A program made the position numbers and the translations under genes. Shown piece after piece: positions 5,789 to 60,838 of a stretch of DNA of 64,000 nt. Below the pieces are notes generated by a model, which saw nothing but the letters and a program-made list of their open reading frames with translations, searched no databases and had not been told where the DNA came from. The DNA lies in the IMG/VR virus record IMGVR_UViG_3300028558_000791, positions 416,839 to 480,838 of that record; one strand, given 5' to 3'. Numbering within the stretch: the stretch's first letter is position 1; each line of letters opens with the position of its first letter.

Positions 5789-5872
5789 CCAGCTCCCTGG
5801 CCCGACCTCCCATTCACTGGGAGGCGGGCTTTAGGCATTATCAGGGGGCATGGGCAATGTCCCCATCTGTGT

Positions 5873-6014
5873 AGGAGGAATGCCGAGTAGTCGCTCAAGC
5901 CTGGAACATGGCGACACGAGCGTAAAAAGACTAGCAGGTGTCACACACCGTTTGGGCTAACTAGCTCCCGAGTGTGTGAAACTGTAATCTAGTGTAGCTA
6001 CTCGTAACTCTCCT
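5873..6014 (+). ncRNA. Candidate multi-stem structured RNA
   Basis: Nested complementary segments AGGAG/CTCCT, CGAGTAG/CTACTCG, CGCTC/GAGCG, ACTAG/CTAGT, TCACACAC/GTGTGTGA in a non-coding gap. Confidence 0.5.
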
Positions 6015-6054
6015 TGTGTTCTCTCCCATTCACAACTCACCCTGAGGTGCAGCC

Positions 6055-6303
6055 ATGGCGTACGGTCTTTGGAATGTGAGCGGTAAGGTCATCATCCCCG
6101 GCACGCGCAAGAGCGCCAGCTTCGGTCCCGTTCGCATCGGCGATAAGGATCGTCAGACCGCCAGCAAGTGGCTGGCCTGCATGCTGAACGACAAGTTCAA
6201 GCGTGACCTGCGCGGAGGTGCGAAGTTCTCCGACCACTTCGCCCTCATGAACCTGAAGTGGGAAGATGTCGGCAAAGCTGCGCCGGCTCCCGCACAGACG
6301 TGA
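6055..6303 (+). CDS. Hypothetical protein
   Basis: GAGG RBS, 11-mer at 6023, phage-like codon bias. Confidence 0.7.
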   Translation: MAYGLWNVSGKVIIPGTRKSASFGPVRIGDKDRQTASKWLACMLNDKFKRDLRGGAKFSDHFALMNLKWEDVGKAAPAPAQT

Positions 6304-28992: not shown

Positions 28993-29578
28993 GTAATAAA
29001 GTCCCATAAGGGATAAGGAAGGTCTATAGTGTTCATGGTTCGGCAACAAGGAAAAGTGATTGGGTCATTCGACCTATTCGTCGATGCCTGGTTGTACGTG
29101 TACCTAGAATGCGAATGCTTCGCGCTCATCTTGGAGCGGGGTTCCAATGCAGTTTGGATAATCAATCCTGCATACATCACTTCTCACCCCATAAACTAAA
29201 CAAACTTAGCTGTTACTGTAGTCACCGGGTATGAATAGCAAATTCCGTTGACACTGGAACGGCTCCCATTCACGGCCCGCCGAACGGCGGAACCGCGAAA
29301 CGCAACGTAAGTAACATAAACGGGGCAGACCTGAGCCCCATTGAATGACGGAGCTAAACTCTCTTACTTAGCAGTCTTGATAGAGCGGATAATCCGAGTT
29401 ACATACTGACTGCTTCGTCATAGAGCGGATGCAACGGCAAACGATGCCGGCTCCTAACCTGTCTCGTCATCAGGACGAGACGCAACTTCTCTTAGTTCGT
29501 CGCTACAAGCTAATAGCTTCCCGGTTACCGGGGCTAGGATAGTGAGTAGTATGTCTCGTCAAAAAGGATTCACACATC

Positions 29579-32208: not shown

Positions 32209-32352
32209 ATGAGCAGCAATACTGGAAGGCTAGGACATACTTGTCCTTCCAGTACGCTAAAACTCCTGTCAAAGACAGGAACAACAAACCACCAACTCCT
32301 TCCGAGTGCCTCTTGTATGAGATGGTATTCGAGTATCAACGGGGAGTTGAAA

Positions 32353-32736
32353 AGTTAGTCGGGCCATGAAGATCCTTCCTTCTACAAAAAAATGGAAAAA
32401 CAGGGTCTACGCTTTCCCGACGCTAACTACCTTCTAGGAATGCTAGCCAGTGTAAGGCTTTCCCTTGGTCCACCTATAAGCGACATGATGCATAGGCGTG
32501 TCGGGGAACCTAGCTAGAAGGTACAATGTCATGGGCTATAAGGAGTCTTCCTTCTACTCACAGGCCAAAAGCCTGTATCAAAAATAGACTCCTTGCTTTC
32601 CCATACTGATGAGCCATGAGAATCCTTCCTTCTAAAAACGGATAAAACAGGGTTCTTGCCTACTCATCATTGACGAGCCATGTAAGGTCTTCCTTCTAAT
32701 ACATGCTAAATAAAACAGACCTTACGCCTTCTCGTC
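32353..32736 (+). ncRNA. Tandem array of at least four covarying structured RNA units
   Basis: Units 32358-32421, 32531-32604, 32607-32669, 32672-32736: stem-GC(C/T)AT-9 bp stem-TCCTTCTA-A-rich loop-stem'-GC-pyrimidine bulge-stem'. Confidence 0.8.
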
Positions 32737-32742
32737 TCTAGT

Positions 32743-32772
32743 CCTGAGTGAGATTACTTATCAATCTCAGGG
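32743..32772 (+). repeat. Second copy of the 30053 hairpin with a different outer stem
   Basis: CCT-GAGT-GAGATT-ACTTATC-AATCTC-AGG. Confidence 0.7.
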
Positions 32773-49840: not shown

Positions 49841-50269
49841 ATGAAGACCCCTGTTACCATAGAAGTTTCTGTAGAGATTGTGGATTGGGATCCCGCTTTT
49901 GTAAAAGAAGGTGCAGTCTCTTTCGCCTCTGAAAAGGAAGCTGCCTTCTTTTGGTTCCGTCGGTCTGACTTCAATAGTCACTGCACCATCTCACAAAACC
50001 CACACACTAAACGATGGGTAATGGTGACAGAGATTTATGTTCCCAAATCCAAAGCAGAAGAGGTTGCTCTTTTTTGGAAAGAGGGTTGGGATACGCAGAG
50101 GGATGCGTATGGCCAAGCATGCTGGGACGAATACTACCGTGGTGTTCGTGATGCAGAACTGAATACAGTTTTTGATCGAGAGGGCTTTGGTGAGAAGATC
50201 ATTCAACGCCTGGCCAAAGCGATGCCTAAGTGGATGTTCGCAAATAAACAGTTGAAGGAAAACAAATGA
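49841..50269 (+). CDS. Hypothetical protein
   Basis: ATGA coupling to the RNA ligase gene. Confidence 0.6.
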   Translation: MKTPVTIEVSVEIVDWDPAFVKEGAVSFASEKEAAFFWFRRSDFNSHCTISQNPHTKRWVMVTEIYVPKSKAEEVALFWKEGWDTQRDAYGQACWDEYYRGVRDAELNTVFDREGFGEKIIQRLAKAMPKWMFANKQLKENK

Positions 50270-51360
50270 AGTTCATGGCATGGCCGGAGATTGAATCGTT
50301 CCACAATATTAGGAAGTTCATCCGTGTTGATCCGGGTGAGTGGTGGCACAAGAAAGAACTTCTTGCCGGCACGAGTGTTGTGTCCTACAAGGCCAAGGTC
50401 AAGCTGCACGGAACCAATGCGGCTGTACGAATTGATTCTAGTGGTAACGTCACGGCTCAAAGCCGAACCAACATCATCACTCCCGAGAATGACAACGCAG
50501 GCTTCGCCCGCTGGGTGAAGGCCAATGAGAATGAGTGGAAGAAGACGGCAGCCGTTCCTACTAAGGATAATCCTGCCGACCACTATCTCAATGTGGTTTA
50601 CTACGGTGAGTGGATTGGCCCTGGCATTCAAAAGAATGTTGCCGTATCTGAGATTCCCAAGAAATGTTTCGCCGTCTTCGCCATGAAAATTCTTGGCAAG
50701 GATGAAGAGGAAGTTCTTTTCGAGGTTGAACCTAAACGTATCGAGATGTATCTCGGCAAGAGTGGAATCAAGTTTGCTTTTTCAGAAGAAGCCAACCTTC
50801 CTGATGTCTATGTTCTTCCCTGGTATGAGCAGTCAATCGACATCGACTGGAAGCAGAACGATGAAGAACTGAGCAAGACCATTGCACCCATCAACGATTG
50901 GGTAATGGCTATCGAAGCCAATGACCCGTGGGTTGAGAAGACCTTTGGCGTCAAGGGAACTGGTGAAGGTTTAGTCTTCTATCCAGCTTCCGTTGCACAT
51001 AAGAACAGCTTCGAGCACTTCACCAACCTTTGCTTCAAGGCTAAAGGAGAGAAGCATAAGAACATTGCTACTGCCAAGCCCGTCCAGGTAAGTGCAGAAG
51101 CGGCTGCCAGCATCGATGCCTTCGTTGCCATGGTCCTCACTGAAGCTCGACTGGAGCAAGGGGCGACTAAGGTTTCTCCAGGTGGTGCACTTACCTATGA
51201 CATGAAGAATACGGGTAAGTTCGTCACATGGGTAAGTGCGGATGTGGAAAAAGAAACTCAGGACGAGTTGGCTGCAAGCAGTCTGACTTGGAAGGAAGTT
51301 CAGAAACCCATCAGTGACAAGGCCCGCTCCTGGTATCTCACTAAGGCTAAGGGATTTTGA
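50266..51360 (+). CDS. RNA ligase, Rnl2-type
   Basis: Motif I KLHGTN, YGEWIG.GIQK, FAVF, GEGLVF, FKAK. Confidence 0.85.
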   Translation: MKFMAWPEIESFHNIRKFIRVDPGEWWHKKELLAGTSVVSYKAKVKLHGTNAAVRIDSSGNVTAQSRTNIITPENDNAGFARWVKANENEWKKTAAVPTKDNPADHYLNVVYYGEWIGPGIQKNVAVSEIPKKCFAVFAMKILGKDEEEVLFEVEPKRIEMYLGKSGIKFAFSEEANLPDVYVLPWYEQSIDIDWKQNDEELSKTIAPINDWVMAIEANDPWVEKTFGVKGTGEGLVFYPASVAHKNSFEHFTNLCFKAKGEKHKNIATAKPVQVSAEAAASIDAFVAMVLTEARLEQGATKVSPGGALTYDMKNTGKFVTWVSADVEKETQDELAASSLTWKEVQKPISDKARSWYLTKAKGF

Positions 51361-58206: not shown

Positions 58207-58560
58207 ATGATAAACATGGATACGATTACGTATGACGATTTCGTCAAGGTGGATATTCGAGTTGGTACCATTACCAGCGCGGAGCTTGTTCCCAAGAGCA
58301 AGAAGCTGGTCAAGCTGGAAGTCTCTTTTGGAACAGAGACTCGTACCATCCTGGCTGGCATTGCATCCATGATTCCTTTCCTCTTGGATAGCAAAGTAGA
58401 GAACTTCGCAGGGCGGCAGGTTGTGGCGGTTCTCAACCTGGCACCTCGTGAAATGATGGGGATTCAAAGTCATGGAATGCTACTGGCCGCGCATGGCGCA
58501 GATGGTAATCTCTCACTTGCTTCCTGTCCAGGAGCCCCTGACGGAGCAGCTCTCGGCTGA
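58207..58560 (+). CDS. tRNA-binding OB-fold protein (CsaA/Trbp111/MetRS C-terminal-like)
   Basis: DDFVKVDIRVGTI...SKKLVKLEV...RTILAGI...NLAPR...S.GMLLAA. Confidence 0.9.
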   Translation: MINMDTITYDDFVKVDIRVGTITSAELVPKSKKLVKLEVSFGTETRTILAGIASMIPFLLDSKVENFAGRQVVAVLNLAPREMMGIQSHGMLLAAHGADGNLSLASCPGAPDGAALG

Positions 58561-59230: not shown

Positions 59231-59647
59231 ATGGAACAGAAAGAATTCGAAGCTAAACTAGTCAAGGAGTTTCCCAATCTATACAGGAACATGCGCGGAG
59301 ACCCGCGTGTGACCTGTATGGCCTGGGGGATTGCCGTCGGAGCTGGCTGGTGGGATATCATCTACGACCTCTCCCAGAAGTTGGAGACGATGATTCAGAA
59401 TATTCCCGAAGACAAGAGGCCAGAATACATGGCTGCGCAAGTCAAAGAGAAGTTCGGCGGGCTTCGTTTCTACATGGAGGCATCTACTCCAGAGATGAAT
59501 GCGTTCATCAATGAGGCTGAGGCTAAGTGTTGGCATACCTGCGAACAGTGTGGCCGGCCTGGCAAGCTGGTCAAGGCTGGATGGCTCTATGTATCCTGCA
59601 AAGAGCATGCGAAGAAAGAACATCAAACCCAATTCGAGGACACATGA
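59231..59647 (+). CDS. Conserved phage protein
   Basis: GAGWW.II...QVKEKFGGLRFY...TCEQCG.PG. Confidence 0.85.
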   Translation: MEQKEFEAKLVKEFPNLYRNMRGDPRVTCMAWGIAVGAGWWDIIYDLSQKLETMIQNIPEDKRPEYMAAQVKEKFGGLRFYMEASTPEMNAFINEAEAKCWHTCEQCGRPGKLVKAGWLYVSCKEHAKKEHQTQFEDT

Positions 59648-59940
59648 GCAACGAAAAAGTCGAAACCCTGGACAACCAAATCTTCACTGCCGATGCGTGG
59701 CGCCCTGACCAAGGACTCAATGCTCAGTACAAGGATGTGACTCTCAAGATTCAGGTGGGTGAGTTCCCGGTTGGTAGCAAGTTCCCCTTCGCTATCCTAC
59801 TTGGAGACGCATCCATGCTCGTGCTCGTGGATGAGGCCCATAAGGAACATGGGTTCCGTTTGGCCCTGAACGTTGGTGAGTCTGTGGATCTGTCCGAGCT
59901 TCAATGCCAGGACGAGAACTGCACCCATCATCACGGATAA
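59644..59940 (+). CDS. Hypothetical protein
   Basis: L.VQVG.F..G...P pattern; ATGA coupling. Confidence 0.7.
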   Translation: MSNEKVETLDNQIFTADAWRPDQGLNAQYKDVTLKIQVGEFPVGSKFPFAILLGDASMLVLVDEAHKEHGFRLALNVGESVDLSELQCQDENCTHHHG

Positions 59941-59944
59941 GACT

Positions 59945-60480
59945 TAGACTTACCAAACCAAAAGGACGCTGATGGTGAGGTAGGGCTGACAAGTACAGTC
60001 AGCTTTCGGTTCAACGACCTGCGCAACAGGTAGTTGGTTCGAGTCAAGGGGTTGCTAGCTGCACCTGTCCATCAATGGATTAAATTAGCTAGGGTATCAA
60101 CTTCCATAAGTTGAAGCGTAGGCGGTCAAGTCTTATACATAGCCCCGGTTCTTGTTCAATATTGCCGGTCTCAATATTGGTCTTAGGTCAACATCTCAAA
60201 CACCGAATGAAATTCGAGATCAGTGTTGCTGACTTCTGAAGTAGTAGAAGGTTAGGGGCACTCCTGCCCATACCCGTGAGCGTCAGTTTTCGCTTCCGTT
60301 TTGAGTACGAAAACATAAGCACATGCTTAGTAACCAACTTGCAAGGGTTACGGTGTAGGTGCCTATAAAACGGAGGATCAATCTTATAGGAGAGTGTACT
60401 GTGGCAACTTGAGCGCCACCATAACGAATGGAGATAGTTATGACACCCGCTGTTTGACCGTGGCGTTCAACGGTCTAAGC
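59945..60480 (+). ncRNA. Candidate large structured ncRNA upstream of tRNA-Glu
   Basis: About 530 nt without a convincing ORF, with at least 10 hairpins. Confidence 0.45.
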
Positions 60481-60481
60481 C

Positions 60482-60556
60482 GGCCCCATCTTCTAGCGGC
60501 TAGGATGCGAGACCTTCACTCTCGTCACACGGGTTCGAGTCCCGTTGGGGTCACCA
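60482..60556 (+). tRNA. tRNA-Glu (anticodon UUC) with encoded CCA
   Basis: GGCCCCA/TGGGGTC acceptor, CGAGA-CCTTCAC-TCTCG, ACGGG-TTCGAGT-CCCGT, ACCA; C at position 33. Confidence 0.85.
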
Positions 60557-60568
60557 GGAGAATACACA

Positions 60569-60838
60569 ATGGATTCAGTACCGCTCAAAAAGATTCGAGA
60601 AAAAGCCGAGGCATACGATAAGAAACTCCTGGCCACTGACCCTCGATTCCGAAGGGCAGTTACCATCCAACATGAAGATGGATCAGTTCTATATTTCAAT
60701 CACGCTTTCTTAGCAAGGATTGATGATTGGGTTGTGTGTTTCACTGAGCACCATGGCGTACACGTTTATCACTCTGGGGATTTATATTCCTATGAGGAAC
60801 ACACTCGAAGGCACGAGGCTATTGAGGAACTACCATGA
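60569..60838 (+). CDS. Hypothetical protein
   Basis: AGGAG RBS; FTEHHG. Confidence 0.7.
   Translation: MDSVPLKKIREKAEAYDKKLLATDPRFRRAVTIQHEDGSVLYFNHAFLARIDDWVVCFTEHHGVHVYHSGDLYSYEEHTRRHEAIEELP

What the first reader, a model, noticed from the sequence alone, without database searches (positions are those of the whole stretch)
59945..60480. About 530-nt hairpin-dense non-coding region directly upstream of the tRNA
Seen, in an otherwise gene-packed genome: GCTGAC/GTCAGC (59985-60003), CTAGCT/AGCTAG (60055-60092), TCAACTT/AAGTTGA (60097-60114), CAATATTG twice, GTAACC/GGTTAC (60330-60351), CCTATAA/TTATAGG (60362-60390), GTGGC/GCCAC, CATAAC/GTTATG (60420-60442) and GACCG/CGGTC. Established: large phage ncRNAs such as GOLLD and ROOL are often encoded beside tRNAs. 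Inference: a large structured RNA, class unknown.
Basis: partly seen in the sequence, partly recalled or inferred. Interest (0 to 1): 0.6.

Follow-up and report, generated by a model that had tools for sequence, protein, structure and literature searches.

The report
Large structured phage RNA beside tRNA-Glu
The gene-free stretch in front of a tRNA gene in this half-megabase soil phage encodes a conserved, elaborately folded non-coding RNA of about 440 nucleotides that matches no described RNA family, so it adds to the few large phage RNAs whose job is still unknown.

Summary
Window 59941-60481 has no conserved ORF. It lies between a 98-aa gene and tRNA-Glu(UUC) in a 480-kb XacN1-related jumbo phage from rhizosphere soil. 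Rfam 15 finds only the tRNA.

I recovered about 16 distinct homologues from IMG/VR, JGI, ENA, NCBI and Logan contigs, always after the same small gene. A 12-sequence alignment gives 103 predicted pairs, 40 of them with changes on both sides. On 10 sequences, 96.9% of cells pair, against 35-44% when partners are slid, and no shuffle of 500 reaches the observed value. G.U pairs outnumber A.C 157 to 8, so the RNA is read from the + strand.

The unit is a 442-nt core (59941-60382). Its 3' half is 79-94% identical across homologues, more than the flanking genes or the tRNA. An optional 99-nt three-hairpin extension (60383-60481) is absent in several lineages, where the core ends exactly at tRNA position -1. 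A 125-nt mini-version in a more distant phage also abuts a tRNA-like element.

Best reading: a new class of stable phage ncRNA, co-transcribed with the tRNA and probably released by RNase P. Invariant palindromic loops hint at self-association, as in ROOL and GOLLD. Expression and function remain untested.

The parts
59941..60382 (+). Core structured RNA, 442 nt. It starts 1 nt after the stop codon of the upstream gene and ends with ...GGAGGAUCAAU.
   Evidence: Homologous in all recovered loci. 119 predicted pairs, 39 covarying, 96.9% of cells paired. z -4.45 on +. G.U 157 against A.C 8.
59942..60188 (+). 5' domain, closed by long-range helix H1 (59942-59950 with 60179-60188). It holds hairpins H2-H9 and a variable, deletable segment at about 60043-60113.
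   Evidence: This domain is 66-73% identical between lineages but structure-preserving. The variable segment is deleted in L029 and L039.
59983..60005 (+). Hairpin H3. The stem covaries (six stem versions). The loop always holds a palindrome: GUAC, UGUACA in L039, GUUAAC in L029.
60157..60179 (+). Hairpin CAAUAUUG / loop CCGGUCU / CAAUAUUG. This is an alternative to RNAalifold's H9.
   Evidence: Local folds of 12 homologues keep it through different stem sequences, for example GUUUUCUA/UAGAAAAC in L038 and AAUCUU/AAGAUU in L030.
60189..60382 (+). 3' domain (hairpins H10-H14 and the long arm H15-H17). It is the most conserved DNA of the neighbourhood.
   Evidence: 79-94% identity, against 63-88% for the four flanking genes and 80-88% for the tRNA. 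Models R1 and R2 were built on 60229-60382.
60293..60376 (+). Long arm H15-H16-H17. It includes the internal loop UGAGUACGAAAAC and the conserved flanks GCUUAG ... CGGUG.
   Evidence: H15 is invariant among close homologues but changed on both sides at 4 pairs in the G003 mini-version.
60336..60345 (+). H17 loop AACUUGCAAG, containing the 8-nt palindrome CUUGCAAG. It is invariant in every homologue and in G003, while its stem covaries at 4 of 6 pairs.
60383..60481 (+). Optional 3' extension. A GUGU/ACAC helix encloses two hairpins, and a third hairpin follows.
   Evidence: Present in the window, L012, L023, L024 and L027, with 3 compensatory pairs. Absent in L025, the L030-L037 clade, L049 and L048.
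60482..60556 (+). tRNA-Glu(UUC) with an encoded CCA. Its 3' end overlaps the ribosome-binding site of the next gene.
   Evidence: ARAGORN. Rfam RF00005, 47.5 bits. Sequence read.
59644..59940 (+). Upstream gene P0003 (98 aa, Cys/His-rich C-terminus, no family). It precedes the RNA in all but the G003 mini-version, directly so except in L012 and L048, where one or two small ORFs intervene.
60569..60838 (+). Downstream gene P0004 (89 aa, no family), on the same strand.

Best explanation
Window 59941-60382 (+) encodes a previously undescribed, highly structured non-coding RNA of about 440 nt, carried by a small clade of XacN1-related jumbo phages from soil, rhizosphere and peat. In some lineages, including this one, a 99-nt three-hairpin extension (60383-60481) follows it.

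Shown: the sequence is non-coding, it is under selection for an RNA secondary structure read from the + strand, and its 3' half is the best-conserved DNA of the locus.

Inferred: it is transcribed with the surrounding same-strand genes and with the tRNA-Glu that follows it. Its 3' end is made when RNase P cuts at the 5' end of the tRNA, because in five lineages the core ends exactly or within 1 nt of tRNA position -1. It then acts in trans as a stable folded RNA rather than as a tRNA leader, because the core is kept where the tRNA has been deleted (L029) or moved 760 nt away behind an inserted ORF (L050/L051).

Speculative: the invariant palindromic loops (CUUGCAAG in H17; GUAC, UGUACA or GUUAAC in H3) mediate symmetric loop-loop contacts between copies. 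That would make it an RNA-only or RNA-protein particle of the ROOL/GOLLD/OLE kind.
For: Non-coding.

No known family.

Homologues, almost always after the same gene.

Covariation: on 10 sequences, 39 of 119 pairs change on both sides, 96.9% of cells pair against 35-44% for slid partners, and 0 of 500 shuffles reach the observed values. On 12 sequences, 40 of 103 pairs change on both sides.

Strand: G.U/U.G 157 cells against A.C/C.A 8. Core z is -4.45 on + and -2.74 on -.

Conservation: the 3' domain is 79-94% identical, more than the flanking genes and the tRNA in nearly every lineage.

Abutment to the tRNA: L025, L030/L036, L049 and L048.

Mini-version in G003: 28.5 bits with R1 and E 1e-6, in a 230-nt gap, ending where a tRNA-like element starts (RF00005, 24 bits).

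Independence from the tRNA: L029 keeps the core, with a compensatory G-C to C-G change in H13, after losing the extension, the tRNA and two genes. In L050/L051 a 210-aa ORF lies between the RNA and the tRNA.

Transcription context: no sigma-70-like promoter or terminator near the element, and all neighbours are on +.

Palindromic loops. Symmetric palindromic kissing loops are documented in OLE, GOLLD and ROOL (bioRxiv 10.1101/2024.12.08.627333).
Against: There is no expression data at all. No public RNA run holds the sequence, so the transcript, its ends and its stability are inferred.

The family is narrow: about 16 sequence variants that are mostly 75-94% identical in the 3' domain. Several helices (H13-H15) therefore never vary among the close homologues, and part of the covariation signal comes from a few lineages.

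The exact fold of the 5' domain is uncertain. H1 is lost, and H9 and the variable segment change, when L048 and L050 are added.

RNase P processing does not explain the 3' end in L029 or L050/L051.

The palindromic-loop idea rests on invariance plus two single-lineage variants. A 4-nt palindrome in a 7-nt loop is expected by chance about one time in five.

Related complete jumbo phages (G002, G004, XacN1, Xoo-sp13) lack the element, so it is dispensable for the wider group.
Confidence: 0.7

Rival explanations
1. It is a cis-acting 5' leader of the tRNA-Glu precursor. It would control the tRNA's processing, folding or amount and be discarded after RNase P cleavage.
For: It lies directly 5' of the tRNA, at nucleotide resolution, in several lineages. 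The G003 mini-version also abuts a tRNA-like element.
Against: The core is kept, with compensatory changes, where the tRNA is deleted (L029) and where a 210-aa ORF separates them (L050/L051). In the L030-L037 clade the tRNA looks degraded: ARAGORN does not call it and it scores 33.6 bits against 47.5, yet the RNA's 3' domain stays 94% identical. The RNA is better conserved than the tRNA. The other 57 tRNAs of the genome have no such leader.
Confidence: 0.12
2. It is a structured 3' UTR of the upstream gene (P0003). After the tRNA is cut out, it would protect that mRNA from 3' exonucleases.
For: In the window the structure begins 1 nt after the P0003 stop codon, and a P0003 homologue lies upstream in every locus that has the full RNA. 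No promoter-like site lies between them.
Against: In L048 two other small ORFs lie between P0003 and the RNA, and the RNA again starts right after a stop codon. In L012 an extra ORF also intervenes. A protective 3' end needs one stable hairpin, not 17 covarying helices with invariant loops. The G003 mini-version has no P0003 homologue nearby.
Confidence: 0.08
3. It is a decayed relic: a degenerate tRNA array, or a remnant of an intron or mobile element. It would be conserved only because the phages are close relatives.
For: It sits by a tRNA in a genome with 58 tRNAs. Insertions and deletions occur around it.
Against: No tRNA-like hit lies inside it at E<=10 and there is no paralogue in the genome. 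Its 3' domain is more conserved than the neighbouring protein genes. Substitutions are overwhelmingly structure-preserving. There are no group I or group II intron matches, and the 3' end is U, not the terminal G of group I introns.
Confidence: 0.03
4. It is a DNA-level element: a replication origin, a packaging site, or a prophage attachment site at a tRNA. IMG/VR labels the record a provirus, and the tRNA lies 3.5 kb from its end.
For: The IMG/VR 'provirus' label and the parent contig being 17.6 kb longer. tRNA genes are common integration sites (general knowledge).
Against: G.U pairs outnumber A.C pairs 157 to 8, an asymmetry that is meaningless for double-stranded DNA. The same genes continue in synteny on both sides in many phage contigs. 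In G003 the downstream neighbour P0002 lies inside a complete genome bounded by terminal repeats. There are no direct repeats or iterons.
Confidence: 0.02

Closest known systems
ROOL RNA (Rfam RF03087)
   Same: A large (about 500-600 nt), multi-helix RNA encoded in phages and prophages, often next to tRNA genes. It has no known protein partner or function. Conserved hairpin loops form symmetric kissing contacts (10.1101/2024.12.08.627333; PMC5737381).
   Different: No match to the ROOL covariance model even at E<=10. The helix layout differs. The hosts and habitat differ: a soil jumbo phage related to Xanthomonas phages, rather than rumen and Firmicutes phages. Oligomerisation here is only a hypothesis.
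GOLLD RNA (Rfam RF01998)
   Same: Phage-encoded and tRNA-linked. It has a conserved 3' region and a more variable 5' region, as here (3' domain 79-94% identical, 5' domain 66-73%). tRNAs can be covalently linked to it.
   Different: GOLLD is about twice as long (over 800 nt). There is no model match. Here the tRNA follows the RNA rather than sitting in an internal linker.
Stable RNAs of the phage T4 tRNA gene cluster (species 1 and 2, rnaC/rnaD). From my own knowledge, not checked here.
   Same: Phage-encoded structured RNAs of unknown function, co-transcribed with tRNAs and released by the host tRNA-processing enzymes.
   Different: The T4 RNAs are about 120-140 nt. This RNA is three to four times larger, and no sequence relation was tested.
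3' end formation by a downstream tRNA-like element (MALAT1/mascRNA, MEN-beta). From my own knowledge.
   Same: A long non-coding RNA whose 3' end is created by RNase P cutting at an abutting tRNA or tRNA-like structure. Here the tRNA-like partners in L030-L037 and G003 are imperfect tRNAs.
   Different: That system is eukaryotic and nuclear. The weak Rfam mascRNA hit (20.6 bits against a threshold of 42.5) falls on the tRNA itself and only reflects its tRNA shape.

Membership tests
GOLLD (RF01998) | Match to the family covariance model at or above the gathering score | tested here: not met
   cmscan of the whole window at gathering thresholds, and of 59700-60800 at E<=10, lists no GOLLD hit.
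GOLLD / ROOL as a kind | A large ornate RNA encoded by a phage next to tRNA genes | tested here: met
   The core is 442 nt with 17 helices. The genome is a jumbo phage. tRNA-Glu lies directly downstream.
ROOL (RF03087) | Match to the family covariance model | tested here: not met
   No hit at E<=10.
ROOL / GOLLD / OLE | Homo-oligomeric assembly of the RNA | not testable with these tools
   The only hints are invariant palindromic loops. This needs native gels, SEC-MALS or cryo-EM.
Bacterial RNase P RNA (RF00010/RF00011) | Covariance-model match, that is, the conserved P4 core | tested here: not met
   No hit at E<=10. A partner for GCUUAG in a P4-like pairing (CAAG) varies without compensation.
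Group I intron (RF00028) | Model match, a terminal G at the 3' end, and insertion within a gene | tested here: not met
   No hit. The element ends in U and lies between a stop codon and tRNA position +1.
tmRNA | A tRNA-like domain plus a tag reading frame | tested here: not met
   ARAGORN and Rfam find none here. The genome's tmRNA is elsewhere, at G000 170047-170403.
tRNA or degenerate tRNA array | A cloverleaf detectable by ARAGORN or RF00005 | tested here: not met
   Only the tRNA at 60482-60556 is found. Nothing is found inside 59941-60481 at E<=10.
Protein-coding gene | A conserved open reading frame | tested here: not met
   At least 3 stops in every frame of 8 homologues, and the longest open stretch is 65 codons or fewer.
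Conserved structured non-coding RNA (generic) | Base pairs kept by compensatory substitutions beyond controls | tested here: met
   39 of 119 pairs change on both sides, against 4-9 for slid partners, with 0 of 500 shuffles reaching the observed value. On 12 sequences, 40 of 103 pairs do so.
Conserved structured non-coding RNA (generic) | A discrete stable transcript | not testable with these tools
   No RNA run holds the sequence. Only DNA runs from rhizosphere, peat and pond samples do.

The most novel reading that the evidence does not exclude
This is a third, independent class of self-assembling large phage RNA. Like ROOL and GOLLD, it would sit beside a tRNA and use symmetric palindromic loop-loop contacts (H17 CUUGCAAG, H3 GUAC) to build an RNA-only or RNA-protein particle during infection by a megaphage. 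Alternatively, it is a new ribozyme acting on tRNA-related substrates.
Probability: 0.2. Interest if true: 0.85.

Novelty: new variant of a known kind. Interest (0 to 1): 0.62.

Why it matters
Large RNAs with elaborate conserved folds are rare, and almost all of those understood so far are ribozymes, riboswitches or particles. ROOL and GOLLD, the two known tRNA-linked phage examples, were recently found to form RNA cages, yet their function is still open.

An unrelated RNA in the same genomic setting, in a half-megabase soil phage, gives a third case to compare. It asks whether linkage to a tRNA (for 3' end formation or for cargo) and palindromic loops are general features of such RNAs. The 442-nt core, and the 125-nt natural mini-version, are compact and well-defined targets for structure work.

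It also shows that jumbo-phage intergenic gaps hold undescribed RNA families.

Tried and rejected
Rfam 15 at gathering thresholds and at E<=10 finds only the tRNA. The mir-142, mascRNA and plastid-ycf2 rows are sub-threshold noise.

A search for paralogues in the 480-kb genome (blastn, word size 7) found none.

blastn against 50,697 phage records matched only the tRNA part.

Single-protein scans of IMG/VR with P0001 and P0004 found nothing.

DNA and model searches of the related jumbo phages G002, G004, G005, G006-G009, XacN1 and Xoo-sp13 found nothing. The XacN1 hit at 11.6 bits did not recur with R2, so I reject it.

The syntenic site in G003, upstream of its P0002 homologue, is fully coding and has no tRNA.

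Two scans of 185,579 prokaryote genomes found no copy, so the element is not host-encoded.

The sequencing-run search returned no RNA holders. Laying DNA contigs added only near-identical copies (301 letters laid).

I looked at P0003 as a possible RNA-binding partner. It has no Pfam or PHROG family. The Atlas gives no usable hit. The AlphaFold model (pLDDT 72) has no PDB match with E<=0.001. This gave no lead.

An intramolecular contact between the H3-loop GUAC and the internal-loop GUAC is not supported. L029 changes the first to GUUAAC, and L048 loses the second.

An RNase P-like P4 pairing and a pairing of the H17 loop with CAAGU at about 60127 are rejected, because the partners vary without compensation.

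The tiny ORF behind GGAG at about 60440 is rejected, because its stop is not conserved.

No alternative genetic code was used or needed.

Full report
**Setting.** The window is the last 64 kb of a 480,838-bp IMG/VR virus record. That record was cut from a 498,445-bp metagenome contig that matches the window over the stretch compared. The genome is 43% G+C and carries 58 tRNA genes and a tmRNA. Its proteins place it near Xanthomonas jumbo phage XacN1: a 715-aa ORF is 41% identical to an XacN1 ORF. XacN1 is itself known for 56 tRNA genes (PMC5852040). DNA runs holding the locus come from rhizosphere, peat and pond metagenomes.

A crude ORF tiling covers 92% of the genome. It leaves 29 gaps of 300 nt or more, about ten of which hold tRNA or tmRNA genes.

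**The observation.** Region 59941-60481 lies between a 98-aa gene (P0003, 59644-59940) and tRNA-Glu(UUC) at 60482-60556, which has an encoded CCA.
- No ORF exceeds 49 aa.
- The 541 nt fold better than all 100 dinucleotide shuffles on both strands, with z -3.7 and -4.1.
- For the 442-nt core, the + strand (z -4.45) is clearly better than the - strand (z -2.74).
- Rfam 15 finds only the tRNA, both at gathering thresholds over the whole window and at E<=10 over the locus.
- There is no paralogue in the genome and no match in 50,697 deposited phage genomes apart from the tRNA.

**Relatives.** A DNA search of related IMG/VR jumbo-phage records found one homologue. It lies in a 209-kb record (G001) and is 79% identical, again followed by tRNA-Glu, while its flanking ORFs are not alignable at the DNA level.

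An invariant 20-mer then found five more metagenome contigs, and a second 20-mer found a 340-kb IMG/VR record. Look-ups through the upstream proteins P0003 and P0001 found fourteen more contigs from JGI, Logan, ENA and NCBI assemblies. In total there are about 16 distinct sequence variants. In all of them the element follows a P0003 homologue. In L012 and L048 one or two extra small ORFs intervene.

**It is an RNA, and a folded one.**
- On ten distinct full-length sequences, RNAalifold predicts 119 pairs in 17 helices. Of these, 39 change on both sides while staying paired.
- The explicit count gives 96.9% of cells paired, against 35-44% when the 3' partners are slid by 1-3 columns. It gives 39 covarying pairs against 4-9 for slid partners.
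- No shuffle of 500 reaches the observed paired fraction or covariation score.
- Adding three more divergent sequences gives 40 covarying pairs out of 103.
- G.U and U.G make up 157 paired cells, against 8 A.C or C.A cells. The transcript is therefore read from the + strand, the strand of the tRNA and of every neighbouring gene.
- Every reading frame carries at least three stops in each of eight homologues.
- The 3' half of the core (60189-60382) is 79-94% identical to the homologues. The four flanking genes are 63-88% identical and the tRNA 80-88%.
- The 5' half is only 66-73% identical but keeps its helices through compensatory changes.

**Architecture.** The conserved unit is a 442-nt core, 59941-60382.

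Its 5' domain is closed by a long-range helix (59942-59950 with 60179-60188). It holds several well-supported hairpins.
- H2 has nine of ten pairs covarying.
- H3 has six stem versions.
- H4, H7 and the CAAUAUUG hairpin are also kept.
- A variable segment at about 60043-60113 is deleted in two lineages.

Its 3' domain holds five hairpins and a long arm, H15-H17 (60293-60376). The terminal loop of that arm, AACUUGCAAG, is invariant, while its stem changes at four of six pairs.

- It is present in five lineages.
- It is absent in L025, the L030-L037 clade, L049 and L048. There the core's last nucleotides (...GGAGGAUCAAU) touch the first nucleotide of the tRNA, or lie 1 nt from it.

The detailed fold of the 5' domain is not settled. 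H1 drops out of the consensus, and the variable segment refolds, when the two most divergent sequences are added.

**A distant mini-version.** A covariance model of the last 154 nt (R1) finds nothing in four other related jumbo phages (G002, G004, G005, G006). It gives only a weak 11.6-bit hit in XacN1, which I reject, and nothing in Xoo-sp13.

It does hit a 125-nt element in a 230-nt gap of G003, a complete 452-kb genome, at a different genomic position (28.5 bits, E 1e-6).
- That element keeps H12, the AUACC linker, H15-H17, the GCUUAG and CGGUG flanks and the invariant loop.
- Its H15 is changed on both sides at four pairs (on an alignment fitted to the model).
- It ends where a sub-threshold tRNA-like element begins (RF00005, 24 bits against a threshold of 29).

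A second model that includes this element (R2) finds no further members in ten related records. The motif is absent from 185,579 prokaryote genomes. The family is therefore real but narrow.

**How it probably works.** Shown: this is a conserved, + strand, non-coding structured RNA gene.

Inferred from context: all neighbours are on the same strand, with overlapping or near-zero spacers. There is no promoter-like or terminator-like site near the element, and the tRNA's CCA end overlaps the next gene's ribosome-binding site. The element is therefore most likely made as part of a long transcript.

RNase P cuts pre-tRNAs at position +1 (established knowledge). The repeated exact abutment to a tRNA or tRNA-like structure therefore makes RNase P the likely maker of the RNA's 3' end.

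The RNA does not look like a mere tRNA leader.
- It is better conserved than the tRNA.
- It persists, with a compensatory G-C to C-G change in H13, in a lineage that lost the extension, the tRNA and two genes (L029).
- It persists where a 210-aa ORF now separates it from the tRNA (L050/L051).
- It persists where the tRNA looks degraded (L030-L037).

Speculative: the H17 loop contains an 8-nt palindrome. I estimate the chance expectation at about 1% per 10-nt loop. The H3 loop always contains a palindrome: GUAC in most lineages, UGUACA in L039 and GUUAAC in L029. Symmetric kissing loops with exactly this behaviour hold OLE, GOLLD and ROOL assemblies together (10.1101/2024.12.08.627333). Self-association is therefore a concrete, testable idea, but it is no more than that here.

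**Comparison with what is known.** The closest analogues in kind are ROOL and GOLLD: large, ornate, phage-encoded RNAs, often beside tRNAs, of unknown function. Membership in either family was tested and not met. RNase P RNA, group I introns, tmRNA and tRNA arrays were likewise tested and not met.

A large IMG/VR screen for structured RNAs exists (PMC10690425). I could not check whether a piece of this element is among its 8,495 unnamed candidates. Its bit-score window of 20-200 would have excluded the G000-G001 pair, which scores 283 bits.

I therefore file this as a new family within a known kind of system.

**Limits.**
- No RNA data exist for this phage, so transcript, ends, abundance and function are all untested.
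- The alignment is shallow in lineages.
- The 5' domain fold and any pseudoknots are unresolved.
- The neighbouring proteins gave no lead.

Noticed in passing
window 32209-32753 (+): A second ORF-free gap of 545 nt lies right after the 715-aa ORF. It has the strongest folding signal seen in the window (z -6.3 on +). It contains about four copies of a unit of roughly 90 nt sharing TCCTTCCTTCTA ... AAAACAGGG. Only weak similarity was found in the closest relative. It could be an array of small RNAs or of regulatory hairpins.
   Followed up: partly
window 29181-29541 and 5789-6152: Two further ORF-free gaps fold better than shuffles (z -3.6/-4.4 and -3.6/-2.7) and have no Rfam match.
   Followed up: no
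window 58207-58560 (+): A 117-aa protein with a tRNA-binding domain (PF01588, E 1e-19) lies 1.4 kb upstream. It is kept in synteny in most related contigs, including one (L047) that lacks the RNA. It is a candidate partner of the RNA or the tRNA.
   Followed up: partly
G000 outside the window: 50073-50149, 172924-172997, 173183-173255: ARAGORN calls one tRNA with anticodon UUA and two with CUA, which are ochre- and amber-suppressor-like. Table 11 reads the window's genes without trouble, so I did not invoke another code.
   Followed up: no
G000 123237-123311 versus window 60482-60556: The genome's two tRNA-Glu(UUC) genes are only 51 of 75 nt identical, so the copy beside the RNA is not a recent duplicate of the one in the main tRNA cluster.
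   Followed up: partly
L030:3748-3821, L036:1482-1555: In the L030-L037 clade, ARAGORN does not call the tRNA-Glu that follows the RNA. It scores only 33.6-33.8 bits, with an extra base in the T-stem and an anticodon-stem mismatch. It may be turning into a processing signal only.
   Followed up: partly
L050:3708-4340: A 210-aa ORF with no significant Pfam family is inserted between the RNA and the tRNA-Glu in one lineage.
   Followed up: partly
L043:1623-1699 (G003 78674-78750 region of the 452-kb record): A tRNA-like element with an enlarged anticodon loop scores 24 bits, below threshold. It overlaps the annotated start of a 290-aa ORF, so that ORF's true start may lie further downstream.
   Followed up: no
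window 50266-51360 (+): An RNA ligase gene (PF09414, phrog_548) lies 9 kb upstream. In L050/L051 it lies much closer to the locus.
   Followed up: no
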